Shown here one piece after another: positions 42,817-61,059 of a DNA stretch of 64,000 nucleotides. The notes under the pieces were generated by a model. It did no database searches. It was not told the origin of the DNA and saw only the letters and a list, made by a program, of their open reading frames with translations. The stretch spans positions 150,554 to 214,553 of IMG/VR virus record IMGVR_UViG_3300025012_000028; one strand, written 5' to 3'. A program made the translations under genes and the position numbers. The first letter of the stretch is position 1, and the number at the start of each line of letters is the position of its first letter.

Positions 42817-43440
42817 TTAGAAATGCTCCTCTTCTTCATTGGTAAAAGCTTCAACTGCCCTCGCCAGTTCGGGAGGATTGATAATATCTTCCATTCTCTT
42901 ACAAGAAGGGCAATTATCTTTATTGGGTTCTCCGTGATGGTTTTCACACCATGTCACATAACAACGAATTTCTTCAGGTATCCCATTCCAAATTTCATGC
43001 TTTTTAATTTGTGTAATCGGGAATATGAGCTTGGGCAATTCGGATCGACATAGCCCTTGCATTGAATTGTAGATGGTTTTAATTTCATCCAGAAACGAAA
43101 TTGCATCATCATTCATTACATAACCAATCGCAACCTCATCAACATCTTGAGGGATGATATAAGGCAACATTAAGAACAGAGGGGGATAAGACAGACACCA
43201 ATTATTATTACTGCACCTGACTGAGAAATCGATTGGTTCACCGATATATTCAAAGTTCCACTTCTCAAAAAACGGTCGTATTTTGGAGATTGCTTCTAGT
43301 TCTCGTTTGGTCTGTTCACCATTACCAACCAGATTTATATAACCCGCCTTGACTTTATGCCCTTCTTTTAAAAGACGCCAAATCAAATAGGTACTATCAA
43401 CACCACCACTCCAAAGAACAAATTTAGTTTTTTCTTTCAT
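42817..43440 (-). CDS. queC: QueC-like PP-loop ATPase
   Basis: LWSGGVDST; C-terminal WC...CPSC. Confidence 0.6.
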   Translation of the reverse strand: MKEKTKFVLWSGGVDSTYLIWRLLKEGHKVKAGYINLVGNGEQTKRELEAISKIRPFFEKWNFEYIGEPIDFSVRCSNNNWCLSYPPLFLMLPYIIPQDVDEVAIGYVMNDDAISFLDEIKTIYNSMQGLCRSELPKLIFPITQIKKHEIWNGIPEEIRCYVTWCENHHGEPNKDNCPSCKRMEDIINPPELARAVEAFTNEEEEHF

Positions 43441-43804: not shown

Positions 43805-43856
43805 AATAAGAGCTATCAATATGTTTCATGATAGCTCTTATTATTTCGGAAGTCTA
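43805..43856 (-). promoter_or_regulatory. Terminator hairpin overlapping promoter TAGACT-17-TATCAT
   Basis: 14-bp IR 43805-43818/43829-43842. Confidence 0.7.
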
Positions 43857-43873: not shown

Positions 43874-44143
43874 TTACGCTAATCTGTCCAGAAGATATTT
43901 AGTTTTAATTTTCCCATATTTTTGGTATTCACCAATCATCTGTTTCATCAAATCCAACTTTTCCTGTTCTTCGGGAGTCATAGAATCGAACTTCACAATT
44001 GCCTTGGAAATCTTTTTGAACACGTCTGATATTACTCCTTCTGTTAGAGTTTTGTCGGATGTGATTCTTTTAATTTCTTTAAGGTAGAAATTTAAATCTT
44101 CAGTTTCAGTTAATAGATGTAAAGTCTTCTGGAAATTGTTCAT
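43874..44143 (-). CDS. Putative internal head protein
   Basis: Leader MNNFQKTLHLLTE. Confidence 0.55.
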   Translation of the reverse strand: MNNFQKTLHLLTETEDLNFYLKEIKRITSDKTLTEGVISDVFKKISKAIVKFDSMTPEEQEKLDLMKQMIGEYQKYGKIKTKYLLDRLA

Positions 44144-44485
44144 CTATTTTTCTTCCTTGGGAACTTTACCAACCTCAAAAATCCCCTCGTTGTCAGTTGC
44201 CGTGCTCAACTTGAAAGCTTTGATGATGTCAGCAGCTTTACACCCCTTCAGTGGTTTGCACATAGCTGCAAGCTTCTTGAGGGTACCATAACCGGCAGTT
44301 GGATTTTCTTTAATATAAGCCTTTTGAACATTTCTATATTGGTCGGCAGTAGCCCTTTCCTTGAACTTGAGAATGGTTTTACCATCGGGAAGCACAACCC
44401 CATTCTCTTCTCTTGATTCTACAATCACTTCTGTTTCTTTCGCTTCAGTAAGCGTCTTCAGAATTCGGTTAAAATTGTTTTCCAT
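44144..44485 (-). CDS. Putative internal head protein
   Basis: Leader MENNFNRILKTLTEA; own late promoter. Confidence 0.6.
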   Translation of the reverse strand: MENNFNRILKTLTEAKETEVIVESREENGVVLPDGKTILKFKERATADQYRNVQKAYIKENPTAGYGTLKKLAAMCKPLKGCKAADIIKAFKLSTATDNEGIFEVGKVPKEEK

Positions 44486-44510: not shown

Positions 44511-44690
44511 TTATTTATAATACCAACTAATCTTTACTAATGATCCATCAACTTTATCTACAAAACTACCCAAGTAATCATCTTGTTGAAGCGTTCCAGA
44601 ACGTATGATAGGTTTGATGGAAATTGAATCTGGAGGTCGCACATTGACACAACCAGAAAGAAAAATACATATTAAAATCATTTTAAACAT
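44511..44690 (-). CDS. 59-aa late lipoprotein
   Basis: Hand translation MFKMILICIFLSG|CVNVRPP...ISWYYK; lipobox LSGC. Confidence 0.7.
   Translation of the reverse strand: MFKMILICIFLSGCVNVRPPDSISIKPIIRSGTLQQDDYLGSFVDKVDGSLVKISWYYK
44512..44519 (-). promoter_or_regulatory. T4-type late promoter TATAAATA
   Basis: Exact consensus upstream of 44485 start. Confidence 0.75.
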
Positions 44691-44730
44691 AGAAATCCCT
44701 CATTACGTTTATTTATAATGAGGGATTTCT
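44691..44730 (-). promoter_or_regulatory. 15-bp RBS-occluding hairpin with late promoter TATAAATA (44710-44717) in loop
   Basis: agaaatccctcatta-taaataaacg-taatgagggatttct-ATG on minus strand. Confidence 0.8.
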
Positions 44731-44734
44731 TTTC

Positions 44735-45940
44735 CTATTCTGTTACTTCTTCTACTTCAAGATCATCGGCAATCCCTTCGGAAGCTGAACAATAATTAAA
44801 CTTGGCTCTCATATAATCGGCCAATCCATGTTTCAAAAACTCTTCCCAAAATGCGGGAGTCATTTTCGCCTTGGTCATAAGATCATCTTTCTTATGAGCT
44901 AAGGAAGGTATTTTTTCAGGATTGATCTTATAGGAACTCTTTTCCTTCAGAAAGATTCCTTCTTCCTCATAACAGAATTCGAACAGACCGGAATAAGGTG
45001 TAAGCCCTTCTTCAAAATCAATATTGAACTTGATTTTAGTTTTCTCTTTTGCGGTCCTACATTTGACATTGGTGCTTGTGATCCTCGCCCCAATTACTTC
45101 ATCTTCTTTATCATTCTTAACCTGTGCTTTTGAGAAATCACTAATGATGGAGGAATTGTAAAGCGAACCTTCACCACCCGATATCACCTTACCACCATAC
45201 CCACCAATCTGAGAATATACATGGTTGATGGGAACGATAGGAACATTTTTGATACCAGCTTTGAGTGTTACTGTCCTGAACAATGCGCGGAGTGCCTGTT
45301 GCTTTGTCATATCCCTTGAATCAGTTCCAGTGGTTTTATCCGCAAGTTCTTTCTTCGAACTGATATTACCAATGGAGTCGATACCAATAAAAACTTTATC
45401 ATCGGGATCGAGTTCATCGATTATGTTGATCAGTTGTGTATTAAGTTCTTCAATGGTAGGAACCGGAATGAACAGCATGTTCTCAGTATCAATTCCACGT
45501 TTCTTCAGATCTTCTTTGGAGTTGTTGGACATCTCAGTTTCAAATAGAACGAAGAAGTATCCAAGGTCGCGCTGTGCGTGTTTAGCAGTCTCTAACATGA
45601 GATAAGTCTTACCGACCGAGTTCAGACCCGCCAATTGCCACACCCTACCAGACGGCATACCCTTATACGGATCGCCACTAATTTGAGCATTGAAAAGATA
45701 ATTACCAGTATTAATCCAGTCACGGATGGGATACTTATCTATTTCGTTGTCGCCCATTAACTGCGCGTACTCAGAACCAGACACATGTTTCAGACGTTCA
45801 CCAAAAGACATTGCTTTCTTTTTAGCTTTTTCTTCGGCAGAATTGTCTTTGAGAATTTTCTTCTCTTCTTTTGAGAGTTTGATGTTGTTTTCTAATTTGA
45901 TTTTAAGTTCTTTCAACACGTCTTCTGAAACAATAGCCAT
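44735..45940 (-). CDS. uvsX: RecA-like recombinase
   Basis: TG.Y.FNA.ISG, AGLNSVGKT, IDSIGN, DMT, INHVY, GG.G..Y. Confidence 0.92.
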   Translation of the reverse strand: MAIVSEDVLKELKIKLENNIKLSKEEKKILKDNSAEEKAKKKAMSFGERLKHVSGSEYAQLMGDNEIDKYPIRDWINTGNYLFNAQISGDPYKGMPSGRVWQLAGLNSVGKTYLMLETAKHAQRDLGYFFVLFETEMSNNSKEDLKKRGIDTENMLFIPVPTIEELNTQLINIIDELDPDDKVFIGIDSIGNISSKKELADKTTGTDSRDMTKQQALRALFRTVTLKAGIKNVPIVPINHVYSQIGGYGGKVISGGEGSLYNSSIISDFSKAQVKNDKEDEVIGARITSTNVKCRTAKEKTKIKFNIDFEEGLTPYSGLFEFCYEEEGIFLKEKSSYKINPEKIPSLAHKKDDLMTKAKMTPAFWEEFLKHGLADYMRAKFNYCSASEGIADDLEVEEVTE

Positions 45941-48965: not shown

Positions 48966-49229
48966 TCATTCCTCTTTGAGTTTAGAAACTTTAATGTTCC
49001 TGATATTGAAAGCACCATCCCCATCGATTCCAAAGGATTTCTTTTGATCGACATCCCCATCAGGATCTACGATAACCTCAAAAGAATGTCCACCATCACT
49101 ATTGCTCTTGATGTGCTCCAACATCCTCTGCAACGAGTTTTCACTATCACTTACCTGAATGGTGATGATGGTATCACCCTCCGATTTATACTCATTCAGA
49201 ATGTTCAAAATGTCTTGATACTTCTTCAT
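48966..49229 (-). CDS. Putative internal head protein
   Basis: Leader MKKYQDILNILNE; GGAGG RBS; late promoter 49255-49262. Confidence 0.6.
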   Translation of the reverse strand: MKKYQDILNILNEYKSEGDTIITIQVSDSENSLQRMLEHIKSNSDGGHSFEVIVDPDGDVDQKKSFGIDGDGAFNIRNIKVSKLKEE

Positions 49230-49254
49230 TATCTTCCTCCAACCATTTTAAATC

Positions 49255-49262
49255 TATTTATA
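49255..49262 (-). promoter_or_regulatory. T4-type late promoter TATAAATA
   Basis: Exact consensus. Confidence 0.7.
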
Positions 49263-49265
49263 AAC

Positions 49266-49754
49266 TTAATGGAATGTGCTGTTAGGAAGATCGATACCAC
49301 AGATTTTGCAATATCCTGTTTGTTCATCGATGATTGATCGTGGAACATACCGCTCACAAACGGGGCATTTAACAAACCCTCGATCAGTATGAATTTGTTC
49401 TTCAAATTTGGTATAAGCAGTCGGCCCGAAATAGAACTTTTTGTTCTTTTCATCTATGTAATTGTCTTCATGAATTGAAAGTTGGGATTGGAAATATAAA
49501 GAGAGGATGTGAGTGTACCACGCGACATCTTGGATGTTGTAGTTATTGACAGTAAAACTCAAAAGATACTGAACATCTGTCTGTTCATCTTTGGGGGGAA
49601 CTGCGAGGAGGATAAATCTTTTGGTGAAGTAGCATTGGTACTCTGCACCATTAAACTTGATTGGAACTATCTTGCCCTGTAAATCCTCCTTGCCCCGTTC
49701 AACCACTTCACAAATGTTCATCGCCTCTTTCAAATTCTCTTTGATAAATTCCAC
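49266..49754 (-). CDS. Hypothetical protein with C-terminal Zn ribbon
   Basis: CPVC...CKIC. Confidence 0.55.
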   Translation of the reverse strand: MEFIKENLKEAMNICEVVERGKEDLQGKIVPIKFNGAEYQCYFTKRFILLAVPPKDEQTDVQYLLSFTVNNYNIQDVAWYTHILSLYFQSQLSIHEDNYIDEKNKKFYFGPTAYTKFEEQIHTDRGFVKCPVCERYVPRSIIDEQTGYCKICGIDLPNSTFH

Positions 49755-56796: not shown

Positions 56797-56855
56797 TCTC
56801 CTTTATATTTATTTATACAAACAAATCTCCTAAACATAAATAAATATAAAGGAGA
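56797..56855. repeat. Perfect 20-bp inverted repeat carrying both divergent RBSs and late-promoter motifs
   Basis: tctcctttatatttatttat / ataaataaatataaaggaga. Confidence 0.9.
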
Positions 56856-56861
56856 TTAAAA

Positions 56862-57647
56862 ATGATAATTTTGAAACCATATCCTTGTGAAACCTGTGGC
56901 AAAGAACGAAATTTTAAATTTAACACAAAAACTGAAAAAGTTTATATGTATAAATCTACTTGTCAGACATGCACTCTTATCGAACGAAATAAAAAACAAA
57001 ATTTTTCTCCACGAAAACATCCCATTGTAGATTATTTTGAATCTATAGATACCCAAGAGAAAGCATATATTTTTGGGTTTCTGTGGGCAGATGGGTGTAT
57101 GAGAGATGCCACACGTAAAAAGGGTGTAAATATTAAAAGTTTAATGTTAGGTATACACCCAAAAGACAAAGAAATTTTAGATTTCATCGTAGCTCATTTT
57201 GGTGGATCGTATAAAGACATCACCTTTCTTGATAAACGGTCTAATAAACGTTACAACAGATCACAGTGGCATTTAAACTCTAAGGAAGTTTATATGAATT
57301 TCATTGGCCTCAATTTCAGAAAAAATTCATTATCAGTTCCAAATCATCTATTCAATCATTTCCTTCGTGGACTTATAGATGGAGATGGATGTTTTCATGT
57401 TAGAAAAAATAAAACAAATTCGATAGAAATTAAGATTACATCAAATTATGACCAAGATTGGTCGTTCATTACTGATAGAATTGATTTCCCACACACAATT
57501 GCCAGATCTGAATATAATTCAGAAAAACGATCTAACTTACATATTTTGGGTGATAAAGTTCAATTTTTAACCTACCTATATAATGATGCTTCATTTTACT
57601 TAAAACGAAAATATAGATTGGCTGAAAAATTCATTATTCGTCCTTAA
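56862..57647 (+). mobile_element. LAGLIDADG homing endonuclease
   Basis: KAYIFGFLWADG and FLRGLIDGDG, LKRK. Confidence 0.9.
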
Positions 57648-57997: not shown

Positions 57998-58759
57998 TCA
58001 TTCCAATTCCTTCCTAAGTTTCTTCAGGATGTTCCGCTCTATTTCCATCACCCTTTGTTGAGAAATATTGAAATGATCTGCCAGTTCTCGCATGGTCATT
58101 TTATTCTCAGCAATAATTCGATTATAAACGATATACTGTTCTCTGTCATTTAAAATCGACAATGCTTTATTAATTTTTTCTTTTAAATTATTTTCTTCCT
58201 GATAAGCAATCAACATATCTTCTTGGTTGTCGCGTTCATCGGGAATGATATCTTTAAACGAATCCCCATCACCATCTATAATATCCTCTAATGAATGTTC
58301 ACCCTTCAGTCTTTCGGCCATTTCCTGAACCTTATCTTCTGCGACATCAGTATGTGAATCAGTATTGAAGAACAATTTCTTCTGAAGTTGGGTCGTTCCA
58401 ATCTTAACCAGACTCCATGAATGCATTATATAATCTTGGATGTGCGCTCTGATCCAAAATACCGCATATGAAATGAGACGAACACCTTTATGTGGATTGA
58501 ATTTCCTGACAGCTTTCATCAAACCAATATTGCCCTCTTGGATTAAATCGAGTATATTAAGGCCATATTCTTTATACTCAAGGGCAACCTTAAGGACGAA
58601 CCTCAAATTGGATTCTATGAGTATCCTTGCGGCTTCTAGGTTGTTATTTTCATATAAATCTATCGCAAGTCGTTTTTCCTCTTCATGTGTCAGAAGAGGG
58701 AACTTTCTAATTTCTTGTGTGTAAAGTTCAAAATTATCTATGGTGGTTATGTTGTTCAA
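57998..58759 (-). CDS. rpoH: sigma70-family sigma factor, RpoH (sigma32)-like
   Basis: PLLT.EEE, DLIQEGNIGLMKAV.KF.P..G.RL.SYA.FWI, RpoH box TTQ.QKKLFFN, region 4 HTH. Confidence 0.85.
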   Translation of the reverse strand: MNNITTIDNFELYTQEIRKFPLLTHEEEKRLAIDLYENNNLEAARILIESNLRFVLKVALEYKEYGLNILDLIQEGNIGLMKAVRKFNPHKGVRLISYAVFWIRAHIQDYIMHSWSLVKIGTTQLQKKLFFNTDSHTDVAEDKVQEMAERLKGEHSLEDIIDGDGDSFKDIIPDERDNQEDMLIAYQEENNLKEKINKALSILNDREQYIVYNRIIAENKMTMRELADHFNISQQRVMEIERNILKKLRKELE

Positions 58760-59456: not shown

Positions 59457-60422
59457 TTAATTTAATTTTTCGATAACTCCACGGCCACCACAACATTCAC
59501 ATTCTACCAGTTCTTTATTGATCATGTCAATTAATTCTTCCAGATAAACCTTAATATTATTTCGAAGATCTTCATAATTCTTACCTTCAAATTCCTTGGT
59601 TCTAGTATATCCTTTGTAAACTCCTTCCCTGCCCCCTCTATCGGGTGCAGTTTCAAAAACTTGAACATCCCTGTTGTGACGATACCGCACTTCGAATTTA
59701 GGTTTCTTGGGGCGCTTGCTGAAGAAATCCAAATTAACATCCACTTCATATACTTCTGGAACTGCCAATGGAATCATCTTCTGAACAACTAAACAAAACT
59801 CATAATCACTGGAAAGCCTTGCGACCTTTCTATCAATATTCTCCTGAAGATATTGACGAATGATCTTAAAACTTTCCGCCGAAGAAAGCTTACAGGGTTT
59901 GGTTGTCAGAAGAACCGGATGAGTGTTGAGTTGATCCAACAGATTATATTGCAGTTCAAATTTCTGATCTACAATCTTGAACTGATCCAGTTCTTCAATG
60001 ATGTTAAGTTCAAATGGAACATCTTCTAACGTCTCTTCGGTTGTGTCATACTGACATTCATAGAGGGATTGAAACGGACTTATATTGGGTGGAAAGAAGA
60101 ATGTAGTATATTCATCCTCACCATACTTTTTATATTCAATTATTGCAGGCAATACATTGGTTGGTGTAATTTCTTGATTCAATACCCATCTTCTATTAAT
60201 CATCTGAGGAGGAATTACTTTCTCAATCTTAGTTGGAAGCTTTGCAATTTCAAACCACTGAGATTTAAAGGTGGATAATGGTTGTTTTCCATCAAACAAA
60301 AGATCAGAAATGTTTGGGTAATTGACCCAAGATTTATTGCTAAGGTCAGCGGAAATATATACACAGGTCTTGGTTTTGATTGCAATCAATTGTAAGACTG
60401 AATTGGGTGTGAATTCTTTCAT
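59457..60422 (-). CDS. Hypothetical phage protein
   Basis: 321-aa ORF, C-terminal C.CC.G.G. Confidence 0.65.
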   Translation of the reverse strand: MKEFTPNSVLQLIAIKTKTCVYISADLSNKSWVNYPNISDLLFDGKQPLSTFKSQWFEIAKLPTKIEKVIPPQMINRRWVLNQEITPTNVLPAIIEYKKYGEDEYTTFFFPPNISPFQSLYECQYDTTEETLEDVPFELNIIEELDQFKIVDQKFELQYNLLDQLNTHPVLLTTKPCKLSSAESFKIIRQYLQENIDRKVARLSSDYEFCLVVQKMIPLAVPEVYEVDVNLDFFSKRPKKPKFEVRYRHNRDVQVFETAPDRGGREGVYKGYTRTKEFEGKNYEDLRNNIKVYLEELIDMINKELVECECCGGRGVIEKLN

Positions 60423-60486: not shown

Positions 60487-61059
60487 TTAACGCTTCGGTT
60501 TCAGTTCCATAGCATCATCGACACCAGTCGTGAACGTTTCTTGCGTCTTGCTAGACATTACCATTTTCAGAGTGTCGAGATTGAATCTAGGGAACCCAAG
60601 CGAACTAAGAACCCAACCTTTAGGAAAATTATCGGGGTCGGTGTTGGTCTTGTAACCCGCAGTCATATCGAGAAGAACTTTCTGGTTCTGTTCGAAATCT
60701 TTACGTCCTGCCTCAACCCTGTTTACCACTTTGGTGAATGCAGTCTGATCATATGCCACGTTGTTTTCTTTAAGCCACTGGAACATTGCCTGTGATCCAT
60801 TCTTACCATACCTGCCCTGCATCGTTGCCCCAACAACTTCTTTGACAGAATCTTTCTGGATATCTGCCACCTGAAGCATTTCGACAATGCTATTGGTGAA
60901 GTTGCTATAGTTGTTCTGGTTCTGTTTGTACTGAGCCTGAAGTGCATTCTCAGTTTTTACTGCGTACTGTTTATATGAAACTACAGTACATCCACCAAAA
61001 CCCGCAACCACTACCAGACTTGCCATAATCACCGATACAATTACTTGCCATCTTTTCAT
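60487..61059 (-). CDS. LemA-like membrane-anchored protein
   Basis: N-terminal TM, helical body, FP..W. Confidence 0.55.
   Translation of the reverse strand: MKRWQVIVSVIMASLVVVAGFGGCTVVSYKQYAVKTENALQAQYKQNQNNYSNFTNSIVEMLQVADIQKDSVKEVVGATMQGRYGKNGSQAMFQWLKENNVAYDQTAFTKVVNRVEAGRKDFEQNQKVLLDMTAGYKTNTDPDNFPKGWVLSSLGFPRFNLDTLKMVMSSKTQETFTTGVDDAMELKPKR

What the first reader, a model, noticed from the sequence alone, without database searches (positions are those of the whole stretch)
44511..44730. Hidden late lipoprotein under an RBS-sequestering hairpin switch
Seen: a 59-aa LSGC lipoprotein absent from the ORF track. Its RBS lies in the 3' arm of a perfect 15-bp hairpin whose loop holds TATAAATA. 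Known: T4 genes e, soc, 49 and I-TevI use this design to block translation from early read-through RNA. Inference: the product is harmful if made early, e.g. a lysis/spanin component or a receptor-blocking lipoprotein.
Basis: partly seen in the sequence, partly recalled or inferred. Interest (0 to 1): 0.65.

Follow-up and report, generated by a model that had tools for sequence, protein, structure and literature searches.

The report
Late-only switch on a phage lipoprotein gene
A T4-like groundwater phage carries a tiny lipoprotein gene just after its recombinase gene uvsX, wired with the known T4 "late promoter inside an RBS-hiding hairpin" design; the regulation is a clear new example of a known trick, while the protein's job is unknown.

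Summary
A 59-aa ORF (44511-44690, minus strand) has a signal peptide ending in the lipobox LSGC. A perfect 15-bp hairpin sits just upstream. Its 3' arm holds the Shine-Dalgarno sequence (SD) GAGGGA and ends 1 nt before the ATG. TATAAATA straddles the 5' arm/loop boundary.

The phage uses T4-type late transcription: it has a gp55 homologue, and 40 TATAAATA motifs are followed by an SD and a start codon. Opening this translation start costs about 22 kcal/mol on read-through RNA and about 1 kcal/mol on RNA started at the loop promoter. That is the largest gap among the 40 late genes. Five other genes use the same design, including a LAGLIDADG homing endonuclease.

A 59%-identical homologue in other metagenomes keeps the lipobox, the promoter and the hairpin, with one compensatory base-pair change. 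dN/dS is about 0.3.

The hairpin probably also acts as the uvsX terminator, because relatives have a terminator followed by a late promoter at this site.

The gene is accessory: it is absent from the closest complete relative and sits in a hypervariable slot with a sharp recombination junction at the hairpin base. The spanin criteria are not met, and "toxic if made early" does not follow from the design. It was "hidden" only because it is one residue under a 60-aa cutoff. New member of a known kind.

The parts
44735..45940 (-). uvsX (RecA-like recombinase, 401 aa), the upstream co-oriented gene whose transcripts would read into the hairpin
   Evidence: Pfam RecA 2.5e-13 and PHROG 97 UvsX-like 1.3e-55. 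Its stop codon lies 4 nt before the stem.
44716..44730 (-). 5' arm of the hairpin (AGAAATCCCTCATTA on the minus strand), present only on RNA started upstream
   Evidence: It is conserved in the homologous loci, and its single change is compensated.
44710..44717 (-). T4-type late promoter TATAAATA, straddling the 5' arm/loop boundary
   Evidence: Its flanks (A at +1, +2, +6, +7) fit the genome's gene-proximal motifs; it ranks 27 of 40.
44704..44704 (-). Inferred late transcription start (A, 6 nt after the motif), the second base of the 3' arm. It would give a 14-nt leader without the 5' arm.
   Evidence: Inferred from the enrichment of A at +6..+8 in 40 promoter-gene pairs and from T4 knowledge. 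It has not been mapped.
44691..44705 (-). 3' arm of the hairpin, containing the Shine-Dalgarno GAGGGA (44696-44701), 5 nt before the ATG
   Evidence: Opening energy is 21.9 (read-through) against 0.9 kcal/mol (late).
44511..44690 (-). 59-aa prolipoprotein gene: signal peptide codons 1-13 (44652-44690), lipobox LSGC (44649-44660), predicted mature part Cys14-Lys59
   Evidence: Homologue P0003 is 59% identical and keeps the lipobox. dN/dS is 0.27-0.34.
44512..44519 (-). Second TATAAATA, overlapping the lipoprotein stop codon, 26 nt before the start of the 113-aa gene
   Evidence: In the homologous loci it reads TATAGATA, so both genes would be co-transcribed there.
44144..44485 (-). 113-aa gene of unknown function, a conserved resident just upstream of the gp41-like helicase gene in related phages
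   Evidence: No Pfam or PHROG hit. No transmembrane segment.
43874..44143 (-). 89-aa gene of unknown function, the last gene before the terminator-like hairpin
43805..43842 (-). Perfect 14-bp hairpin followed by a T-rich tail; the likely 3' end of the late transcripts from the two promoters

Best explanation
The element is a compact three-in-one junction at the 3' end of uvsX. It makes a small accessory lipoprotein a strictly late product.

1. RNA started upstream (uvsX message) contains both arms. It folds into a 15-16-bp hairpin of about -21 to -23 kcal/mol. The hairpin buries the Shine-Dalgarno GAGGGA and abuts the AUG, so ribosomes cannot load. The same hairpin, with its UUUCU-rich 3' side, probably also terminates part of these transcripts, as the uvsX terminators of related phages do.
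2. When the gp55-type late sigma factor is active, RNA polymerase starts at the TATAAATA in the loop, about 6 nt downstream (around 44704). That RNA lacks the 5' arm, so the ribosome binding site is free.
3. The product has a 13-residue signal peptide with the lipobox LSGC. It is expected to be lipidated at Cys14 and, having Val rather than Asp at +2, sorted to the outer membrane of a Gram-negative host.

Shown: the sequence anatomy, the energetics, the conservation, and the genome-wide use of the design. Inferred: the transcription start, the timing of uvsX transcription, lipidation and localisation.

The biological role is not shown. My best guess, at low confidence, is a stand-alone envelope factor of the Llp/Cor type that masks a receptor late in infection so that progeny are not lost on debris, rather than a spanin.
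For: - Hairpin and fold statistics.
- TATAAATA is enriched: 19 in the window against 6.7 expected, and 69 in the genome. Forty are followed by SD plus a start at 16-62 nt.
- A gp55 homologue is present, E = 2.6e-8.
- The opening-energy gap of 21.1 kcal/mol is the largest of the 40 late genes, and 0 of 60 shuffled upstream controls reach it.
- The same design occurs at a LAGLIDADG endonuclease gene, an SbcD-like gene and three small genes.
- The T4 gene e leader shows the same layout, and the reviews describe it.
- The homologous loci L080, L081 and L082 keep the hairpin, promoter and lipobox. One U-A pair becomes C-G. All 4 substitutions in the element keep or extend pairing, while synonymous sites differ at 0.52-0.64.
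- The terminator role rests on a nested hairpin in L001 and on classic terminator-then-late-promoter arrangements after uvsX in seven more distant loci.
- For a stand-alone accessory envelope factor: the gene is absent from the complete 77%-UvsX relative, sits in a hypervariable slot, and has dN about 0.30 against 0.10-0.15 for its neighbours.
Against: - There are no expression data. No RNA run holds this phage.
- The transcription start is inferred, not mapped.
- Covariation rests on 3 distinct sequences and one compensatory pair, which is not significant on its own (157 of 500 shuffles).
- The promoter's flank score is only mid-to-low (rank 27 of 40).
- The signal peptide is very short. Cys at position 14 lies just outside the PROSITE PS51257 range of 15-35.
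- Known receptor-blocking lipoproteins such as T5 Llp are made early, so late timing argues against classical superinfection exclusion.
- The host is unknown.
Confidence: 0.72

Rival explanations
1. The hairpin is simply the intrinsic terminator and 3' stabiliser of the uvsX transcription unit. The late promoter in its loop is a compaction of the usual 'terminator then late promoter' arrangement. The overlap of the 3' arm with the SD is incidental, and late-only expression comes from termination alone.
For: - L001 (58% UvsX identity) has, right after uvsX, a 13-bp perfect hairpin with TATAAAT in its 10-nt loop and a TTTTCT tail. No SD or start codon is in or next to the arm; the next ATG is 44 nt away.
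- Seven more distant uvsX loci have a classic GC-stem plus T-run terminator, often followed by a late-promoter-like motif.
- This genome has three 'terminator then TATAAATA' junctions.
- Most of its long perfect hairpins are A-tract/T-tract terminators.
- The sequence after the GC core here is T-rich (TTTCTATGTTT).
Against: - The consensus scan did not call it a terminator. After the full stem only 4 of 8 bases are T.
- The SD is placed exactly in the arm and the AUG 1 nt after it, both here and in the 59%-identical homologue despite an indel at the start codon.
- Five other late genes in the genome sequester their SD without any terminator-like tail.
- L002 has no hairpin after uvsX at all, so the hairpin tracks the cassette rather than uvsX.
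- The two roles are compatible and are not exclusive.
Confidence: 0.2
2. The lipoprotein is the outer-membrane subunit of a spanin, or another lysis component, and the switch exists because early synthesis would lyse or poison the cell.
For: - It is a small lipoprotein with late-only expression.
- T4 uses the same switch for its lysozyme gene e.
- No T4-lysozyme or amidase_2 endolysin, and no other SD-preceded lipobox ORF next to a membrane protein, was found in the genome. The lysis cassette is therefore unidentified.
Against: - No adjacent or overlapping gene encodes an N-terminal transmembrane partner; the neighbours are uvsX and a soluble 113-aa protein.
- The mature part has no Cys besides the lipid Cys, whereas 505 of 526 spanin pairs have at least one periplasmic Cys.
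- There is no C-terminal transmembrane segment, so it is not a unimolecular spanin.
- There are no Pfam, PHROG or NCBIfam hits.
- The gene is absent from the complete closest relative, which is unexpected for a core lysis function.
- The switch is also used for non-toxic genes (soc in T4).
Confidence: 0.12
3. The ORF and the hairpin are a chance coincidence, or the ORF is not a real gene.
For: - The ORF is only 59 aa.
- It has no family hits.
- All 12 contigs read that carry the identical protein are the same at the nucleotide level across the hairpin and ORF, so they give no comparative signal.
Against: - A homologue with 59% identity was found among 1.84 billion representatives, E = 2.3e-15.
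- The lipobox is conserved, the signal-peptide indel is in frame, and dN/dS is about 0.3 with dS about 1.
- An SD lies at optimal spacing.
- About 0.01 perfect 15-bp hairpins would be expected by chance in the genome (my own estimate), and fold shuffles give 0 of 200.
Confidence: 0.02

Closest known systems
T4 gene e (lysozyme) leader: late promoters plus an RBS-sequestering hairpin
   Same: TATAAATA lies between the two strands of a helix whose 3' strand carries the SD. RNA started upstream is translationally silent, and late RNA lacks the 5' strand. I verified this on the T4 sequence and in PMC3014915.
   Different: - The helix here is longer and stronger: perfect 15-16 bp at about -23 kcal/mol, against about -15 for T4 e in the same 81-nt test.
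- It sits directly on the stop codon of the upstream gene and probably doubles as its terminator.
- It controls an unrelated, accessory lipoprotein.
T4 soc, 49, I-TevI, I-TevII, I-TevIII, segB and Aeh1 mobE leaders
   Same: These are late genes, or mobile genes, embedded in early or middle units. They are silenced by a hairpin over the SD/AUG and released by a late promoter placed so that the 5' strand is not transcribed. This phage also uses the design for a LAGLIDADG homing endonuclease.
   Different: In soc the promoter lies just upstream of the 5' strand rather than in the loop. None of these genes encodes a secreted or lipidated protein.
T5 Llp and phi80/N15 Cor receptor-blocking lipoproteins
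   Same: [quoted passage not shown] Like them, this protein is small and evolves fast.
   Different: No sequence or fold similarity was detected. Llp is made early, whereas this gene is wired for late expression. It is not next to a receptor-binding protein gene.
o-spanins (lambda Rz1, T4 PseT.2)
   Same: They are small outer-membrane lipoproteins made late in infection.
   Different: There is no adjacent i-spanin gene, no periplasmic cysteine, no proline-rich stretch and no homology.
Intrinsic terminator followed by a late promoter at the uvsX 3' end of related T4-like phages
   Same: The genomic position is the same, and so is the logic: stop upstream transcription, then restart with a late promoter. 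L001 has the promoter-like motif nested in the loop as here.
   Different: Here the 3' arm also carries the SD of the next gene, which adds a translational block. The U-tract is weaker than in the canonical terminators.

Membership tests
T4-type late-promoter / RBS-sequestering hairpin switch | The SD and/or AUG is paired in a stable helix on RNA started upstream | tested here: met
   The SD lies in the 3' arm of a perfect 15-bp stem and the AUG abuts it. Opening energy is 21.9 kcal/mol, and 0 of 60 shuffled controls reach it.
T4-type late-promoter / RBS-sequestering hairpin switch | A TATAAATA late promoter is placed so that the late transcript lacks the 5' strand of the helix | tested here: met
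   The motif is at 44717-44710. The inferred start at 44704 lies inside the 3' arm. Opening energy of the late leader is 0.9 kcal/mol. The start site is inferred, not mapped.
T4-type late-promoter / RBS-sequestering hairpin switch | The phage has gp55-dependent late transcription | tested here: met
   A gp55 homologue lies at G000:13533-13871, E = 2.6e-8. TATAAATA is enriched and positioned before SD plus start at 40 genes, including large ones of 450 to 1,575 aa that I take to be structural but did not annotate.
T4-type late-promoter / RBS-sequestering hairpin switch | The gene lies inside or downstream of an early/middle transcription unit, so that read-through RNA exists | tested here: inconclusive
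   The gene is co-oriented with uvsX and 44 nt after it. uvsX is early/middle in T4 (established knowledge). Timing and read-through in this phage could not be tested, and no RNA runs exist.
T4-type late-promoter / RBS-sequestering hairpin switch | Translation from long transcripts is measurably lower than from late transcripts | not testable with these tools
   This needs reporter fusions, toeprinting or ribosome profiling.
Bacterial lipoprotein (signal peptidase II substrate) | Lipobox [LVI][ASTVI][GAS]C after an uncharged hydrophobic stretch, with a basic residue near the N-terminus | tested here: met
   The N-terminus MFK-MILICIF-LSGC passes a PS51257-style pattern. Genome-wide, only 2 SD-preceded ORFs pass it. 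The lipobox is invariant in the homologue.
Bacterial lipoprotein (signal peptidase II substrate) | Cys between positions 15 and 35 (positional rule of PROSITE PS51257) | tested here: not met
   Cys is residue 14 in the window protein, one short of the range. In the homologue it is residue 16 (TTG start) or 20 (ATG start). This is a borderline miss and not disqualifying.
Bacterial lipoprotein (signal peptidase II substrate) | Actual lipidation and cleavage | not testable with these tools
   This needs globomycin and palmitate labelling and a C14A mutant.
Two-component spanin, o-subunit | The gene is embedded in, overlapping or adjacent to an i-spanin gene that encodes an N-terminal transmembrane protein | tested here: not met
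   The neighbours are uvsX and a 113-aa protein without any hydrophobic segment. Criteria are taken from PMC6139136.
Two-component spanin, o-subunit | Periplasmic cysteine(s) or homology to a known o-spanin family | tested here: not met
   There is no Cys after the lipid Cys. No Pfam, PHROG or NCBIfam hit.
Unimolecular spanin (T1 gp11 type) | N-terminal lipoprotein signal plus a C-terminal transmembrane segment | tested here: not met
   The C-terminus, SLVKISWYYK, is not hydrophobic, and no 19-residue window exceeds the threshold.
Llp/Cor receptor-blocking lipoproteins | Homology to Llp or Cor; early expression; blocks a receptor | tested here: not met
   No sequence or fold match. The wiring is late rather than early. 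Receptor blocking cannot be tested here.
Intrinsic (Rho-independent) terminator | A GC-rich stem directly followed by a U-tract | tested here: inconclusive
   The consensus scan did not call it. However, the GC core is followed by TTTCTATGTTT, and the positional equivalents in relatives are terminators.

The most novel reading that the evidence does not exclude
The hairpin-promoter-lipoprotein unit may be a self-insulated, mobile 'late moron' that moves between T4-like phages by recombination at the hairpin. L080 and L081 are 99.9% identical from the hairpin base onward but unalignable just upstream. On this reading its product is a new kind of stand-alone late outer-membrane factor. It could be a single-component outer-membrane disruptor that replaces spanins, or a late-made receptor mask that protects the burst from debris.
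Probability: 0.15. Interest if true: 0.6.

Novelty: new member of a known kind. Interest (0 to 1): 0.38.

Why it matters
- It shows that the T4 e/soc/I-TevI expression logic is kept, and used repeatedly (about 6 of 40 late genes), in a very distant environmental T4-like phage whose UvsX is only about 35% identical to those of cultured phages. That makes the logic a usable annotation rule for late genes embedded in early regions.
- It gives a clean natural example of one 40-nt element that combines terminator, promoter and translational lock, which is of interest as an insulator part.
- It flags a two-member family of small, fast-evolving phage lipoproteins whose function (envelope remodelling, receptor masking or lysis) is open and cheaply testable.

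Tried and rejected
- Megablast of the region against the phage collection gave no match.
- tblastn of the lipoprotein against phages gave only noise, E at least 3.
- Pfam, PHROGs, NCBIfam and PADLOC gave no family for the lipoprotein, and none for the 113-aa neighbour either.
- The ESM Atlas feature search gave no usable hit.
- The single-sequence AlphaFold model was all-beta with mean pLDDT 66, too weak to use. Foldseek against PDB gave nothing below E = 1. The PDB sequence profile search gave nothing.
- Protein-pattern scans of viral contigs and metagenome contigs for more homologues found only the window's own contig.
- All 12 contigs read that carry the identical protein are identical in DNA across the hairpin and ORF; one base differs upstream, inside uvsX. 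They give no comparative signal, and the 56-aa 'variant' is only a different start call.
- T4 gp40 against the 113-aa protein, and T4 Sp against the lipoprotein, showed no meaningful similarity.
- Searches for an endolysin with PF00959 and PF01510 were negative, so the lysis cassette stays unlocated.
- The other SD-preceded lipobox ORF (window 60487-61059) is a PHROG 'virion structural protein', not a spanin.
- Covariation statistics on three sequences are not significant alone.

Full report
**Where the window lies**

The window is bases 150554-214553 of a 214,553-bp IMG/VR virus record estimated 90% complete. The record has about 36% G+C, and most genes lie on the minus strand. It is a distant T4-like phage:
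- The gene upstream of the finding is a UvsX-type recombinase (Pfam RecA, PHROG 97). Its best cultured relatives are cyanophage UvsX proteins at only 33-38% identity.
- A DnaB/gp41-like helicase lies 2.1 kb downstream on the same strand.
- Identical copies of the region occur on contigs from one groundwater study.

**Observation**

All the points below are confirmed.
- On the minus strand, the ORF 44511..44690 encodes 59 aa beginning MFKMILICIFLSGC.
- A perfect 15-nt inverted repeat (44716-44730 and 44691-44705, 10 nt apart) lies between the uvsX stop codon and the ORF.
- As RNA it forms 16 pairs. The 81-nt context folds at -23.4 kcal/mol, z = -6.1, and 0 of 200 shuffles fold as well.
- TATAAATA occupies 44717-44710. 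Two of its bases close the 5' arm and six are in the loop.
- The SD GAGGGA (44701-44696) is in the 3' arm, and the ATG follows the stem after a 5-nt spacer that is itself paired.
- Genome-wide there are 46 perfect hairpins with a stem of at least 10 bp and 10 with at least 15 bp. This is the only one enclosing TATAAATA.
- The gene is 'hidden' only because 59 aa is below a 60-aa cutoff. Public gene calls include it. The 56-aa form on two contigs has identical DNA and is just another start call.

**Does the phage use T4-type late promoters?**

Yes.
- TATAAATA occurs 19 times in the window against 6.7 +/- 2.8 expected, and 69 times in the genome.
- Forty copies are followed at 16-62 nt by an SD and a start codon. 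These include large genes of 450 to 1,575 aa that I take to be structural but did not annotate.
- Their flanks show A at +1/+2 and at +6 to +8, consistent with initiation about 6 nt after the motif. The copy in the hairpin has A at +1, +2, +6 and +7 and scores 27th of 40, well above non-genic copies.
- A homologue of the T4 late sigma factor gp55 is present (E = 2.6e-8).

**Energetics of the switch**

For each of the 40 promoter-gene pairs I computed the free-energy cost of unpairing positions -15 to +5 around the start codon. I did this twice: on a leader extended 45 nt upstream of the motif (read-through RNA), and on a leader starting 6 nt after the motif (late RNA).
- The lipoprotein gene ranks first: 21.9 against 0.9 kcal/mol, and none of 60 controls with a shuffled upstream segment reaches the observed value.
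- Five further genes show gaps of 10-16 kcal/mol:

| Gene | Evidence |
|---|---|
| 256-aa LAGLIDADG homing endonuclease | Pfam PF14528, PHROG endonuclease |
| 87-aa gene at window 48966-49229 | |
| 43-aa ORF | |
| 47-aa ORF | |
| SbcD/gp47-like gene starting at window 56792 | 21-bp stem at -24 kcal/mol, z = -5.6 |

- The large genes show no such gap.
- The design is therefore a recurrent, deliberate feature of this genome. As in T4, it marks mobile or embedded late genes.

**The T4 precedent, checked rather than recalled**
- In T4 (NC_000866) the gene e leader reads TATAAATA between the two strands of a helix whose 3' strand holds GGAGG.
- The soc leader has the promoter just before a helix over the AUG.
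- Uzan and Miller (PMC3014915) state that e, soc, 49 and I-TevI are silenced in this way. They report a 100-fold effect for e.
- Edgell et al. (PMC2988022) extend the design to I-TevII, I-TevIII, segB and Aeh1 mobE.

**Comparative evidence**
- The exhaustive HMMER search over 1.84 billion representatives found one true relative, P0003: 65 aa, 59% identity, E = 2.3e-15. It lies on three short contigs from other samples, L080-L082.
- There too the gene follows uvsX directly and precedes a homologue of the 113-aa gene that is 82% identical.
- The lipobox LSGC, the Val at +2, and the motifs PDSIS, QDD and VKI-WYY are conserved. The signal peptide differs by an in-frame two-codon indel.
- dN/dS is 0.27-0.34 with dS about 1, so this is a real, constrained gene. 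Its dN (0.30) is two to three times that of the neighbouring uvsX 3' end (0.15) and the 113-aa gene (0.10).
- The hairpin and promoter are the best conserved stretch of the alignment.
- Within the element the two lineages differ by four substitutions and a 3-nt loop indel:
  - Two substitutions are a compensatory U-A to C-G exchange.
  - The other two turn a U-G pair and an A/C mismatch at the top of the stem into U-A and A-U.
- With synonymous sites differing at 0.52-0.64, about half of 35 neutral positions would be expected to differ (my arithmetic: P of at most 4 differences is about 2e-6). Part of that constraint is owed to the promoter and the SD themselves.
- The 5' arm has no other known role. 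It shows one change in 12 shared positions, and that change is compensated.
- With only three distinct sequences the formal covariation test is not significant (157 of 500 shuffles).
- The relative's opening energies are 17.5-22.4 against 0.6-1.9 kcal/mol.
- A 1-nt deletion in the relative removes the A of the window's ATG. That leaves a TTG at that position and puts an ATG inside the 3' arm in frame. Either start is covered by the hairpin.

**The hairpin is probably also the uvsX terminator**
- L001 (UvsX 58% identical) has, immediately after the uvsX stop, a perfect 13-bp hairpin with a 10-nt loop containing TATAAAT and a TTTTCT tail. No SD or start lies in or next to the arm.
- Seven more distant uvsX loci carry classic terminators there, several followed by a late-promoter-like motif.
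- This genome has three 'terminator then TATAAATA' junctions elsewhere.
- In the window element the GC core is followed by a T-rich stretch. After the full stem the tail is weak, and the consensus scan does not call it a terminator.
- L002 (UvsX 77% identical, complete genome) has no hairpin. Its uvsX stop overlaps the next start.
- My reading is that the element combines partial termination with a translational lock on whatever reads through. The two effects point the same way, and I cannot apportion them computationally.

**Genomic status of the gene**
- Neither the lipoprotein nor the 113-aa protein has any match in the complete genome of the closest relative.
- Homologues of the 113-aa protein sit just upstream of the helicase gene in other phages. 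In those phages the slot between uvsX and that gene holds unrelated cargo: a papain-like peptidase in one, and 322-, 83- and 47-aa genes in another.
- L080 and L081 are 897/898 identical from the base of the hairpin onward. Upstream of it only a 71-nt stretch aligns, at 80%. Their UvsX C-termini are 43% and 78% identical to the window's.
- The hairpin base is therefore a recent recombination junction, and the lipoprotein gene is accessory cargo of a hypervariable slot.

**What the protein does**

This is not shown.
- It is predicted to be a lipoprotein, with a basic N-terminus, a 7-residue hydrophobic core and the lipobox. Its signal peptide is unusually short: Cys14 is one position short of the PROSITE PS51257 range, while the relative has Cys16 or Cys20.
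- T4-like phages are known only from Gram-negative hosts (established knowledge). The genome's strong SD usage argues against a Bacteroidota host (compare PMC6847099, listed). Outer-membrane sorting is therefore plausible but inferred.
- The spanin criteria from PMC6139136 fail. There is no adjacent transmembrane partner, no periplasmic Cys and no C-terminal transmembrane segment.
- There is no similarity to Llp, to Cor, or to any family or solved structure.
- The stand-alone, accessory and fast-evolving character resembles the receptor-blocking lipoproteins. Those are made early, so I rate a late receptor-masking role as the best guess at about 0.3. I rate lysis-related roles at about 0.12-0.15, and something else at more than half.
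- 'Harmful if made early' is not implied by the switch, because T4 uses it for the harmless capsid protein Soc.

**Verdict**
- The regulatory interpretation is well supported by anatomy, energetics, genome-wide recurrence and conservation, with the added point that the hairpin likely doubles as a terminator.
- The functional guess about the product is not supported.
- This is a new member of a known regulatory kind, attached to an uncharacterised two-member lipoprotein family.

Noticed in passing
window 56797-56855 (hairpin), gene start 56792 (-), neighbouring gene 56862-57647 (+): A 21-bp helix (-24 kcal/mol, z = -5.6) pairs a CT-rich segment with TATAAATA plus the SD of an SbcD/gp47-like nuclease gene. 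The same palindrome supplies an AAGGAGA SD for a divergently oriented LAGLIDADG endonuclease gene on the plus strand.
   Followed up: partly
G000:C1:35147-35940 (locus L074 274-1044): A 256-aa LAGLIDADG homing endonuclease gene has its start region paired with its own late-promoter region (opening energy 17.5 against 1.5 kcal/mol). This mirrors the T4 I-TevI arrangement.
   Followed up: partly
window 48966-49291 (-): An 87-aa ORF of unknown function has TATAAATA (49262-49255) enclosed by a helix that pairs ATCTTCCT with the SD AGGAAGAT (opening energy 16.2 against 1.3 kcal/mol; fold z = -3.8).
   Followed up: partly
window 59457-60422 (-): There is a full-length match to Gad1, the Gabija anti-defence protein (Pfam PF25705, E = 4e-96).
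   Followed up: no
window 57998-58759 (-): The phage encodes a sigma-70 family factor (regions 1.2, 2 and 4) in addition to the gp55-like late factor. This may drive early or middle transcription.
   Followed up: no
window 42817-43440 (-): A QueC-like (7-cyano-7-deazaguanine synthase family) gene lies between uvsX and the helicase gene. It hints at a deazaguanine DNA modification pathway.
   Followed up: no
L080 310 / L081 284: There is a sharp mosaic junction. The two contigs are 897/898 identical from the hairpin base onward but barely alignable upstream, within the uvsX 3' end.
   Followed up: yes
L084 1621-1643: In this relative TATAAATA starts 5 nt after the uvsX stop and ends 5 nt before the next ATG. 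A late transcript would therefore be nearly leaderless.
   Followed up: no
L001 4066-6429; L018-L021: The DnaB-like helicase gene of L001 is split into two matching blocks about 1 kb apart, with ORFs in between that suggest an intein or endonuclease insert. The uvsX matches of L018-L021 are also split by an insertion of about 550 nt.
   Followed up: no
window 43805-43842: A perfect 14-bp hairpin with a T-rich tail lies after the 89-aa gene. An SD and the ATG of the next gene follow directly. It probably ends the late transcripts that start at 44704 and about 44506.
   Followed up: partly
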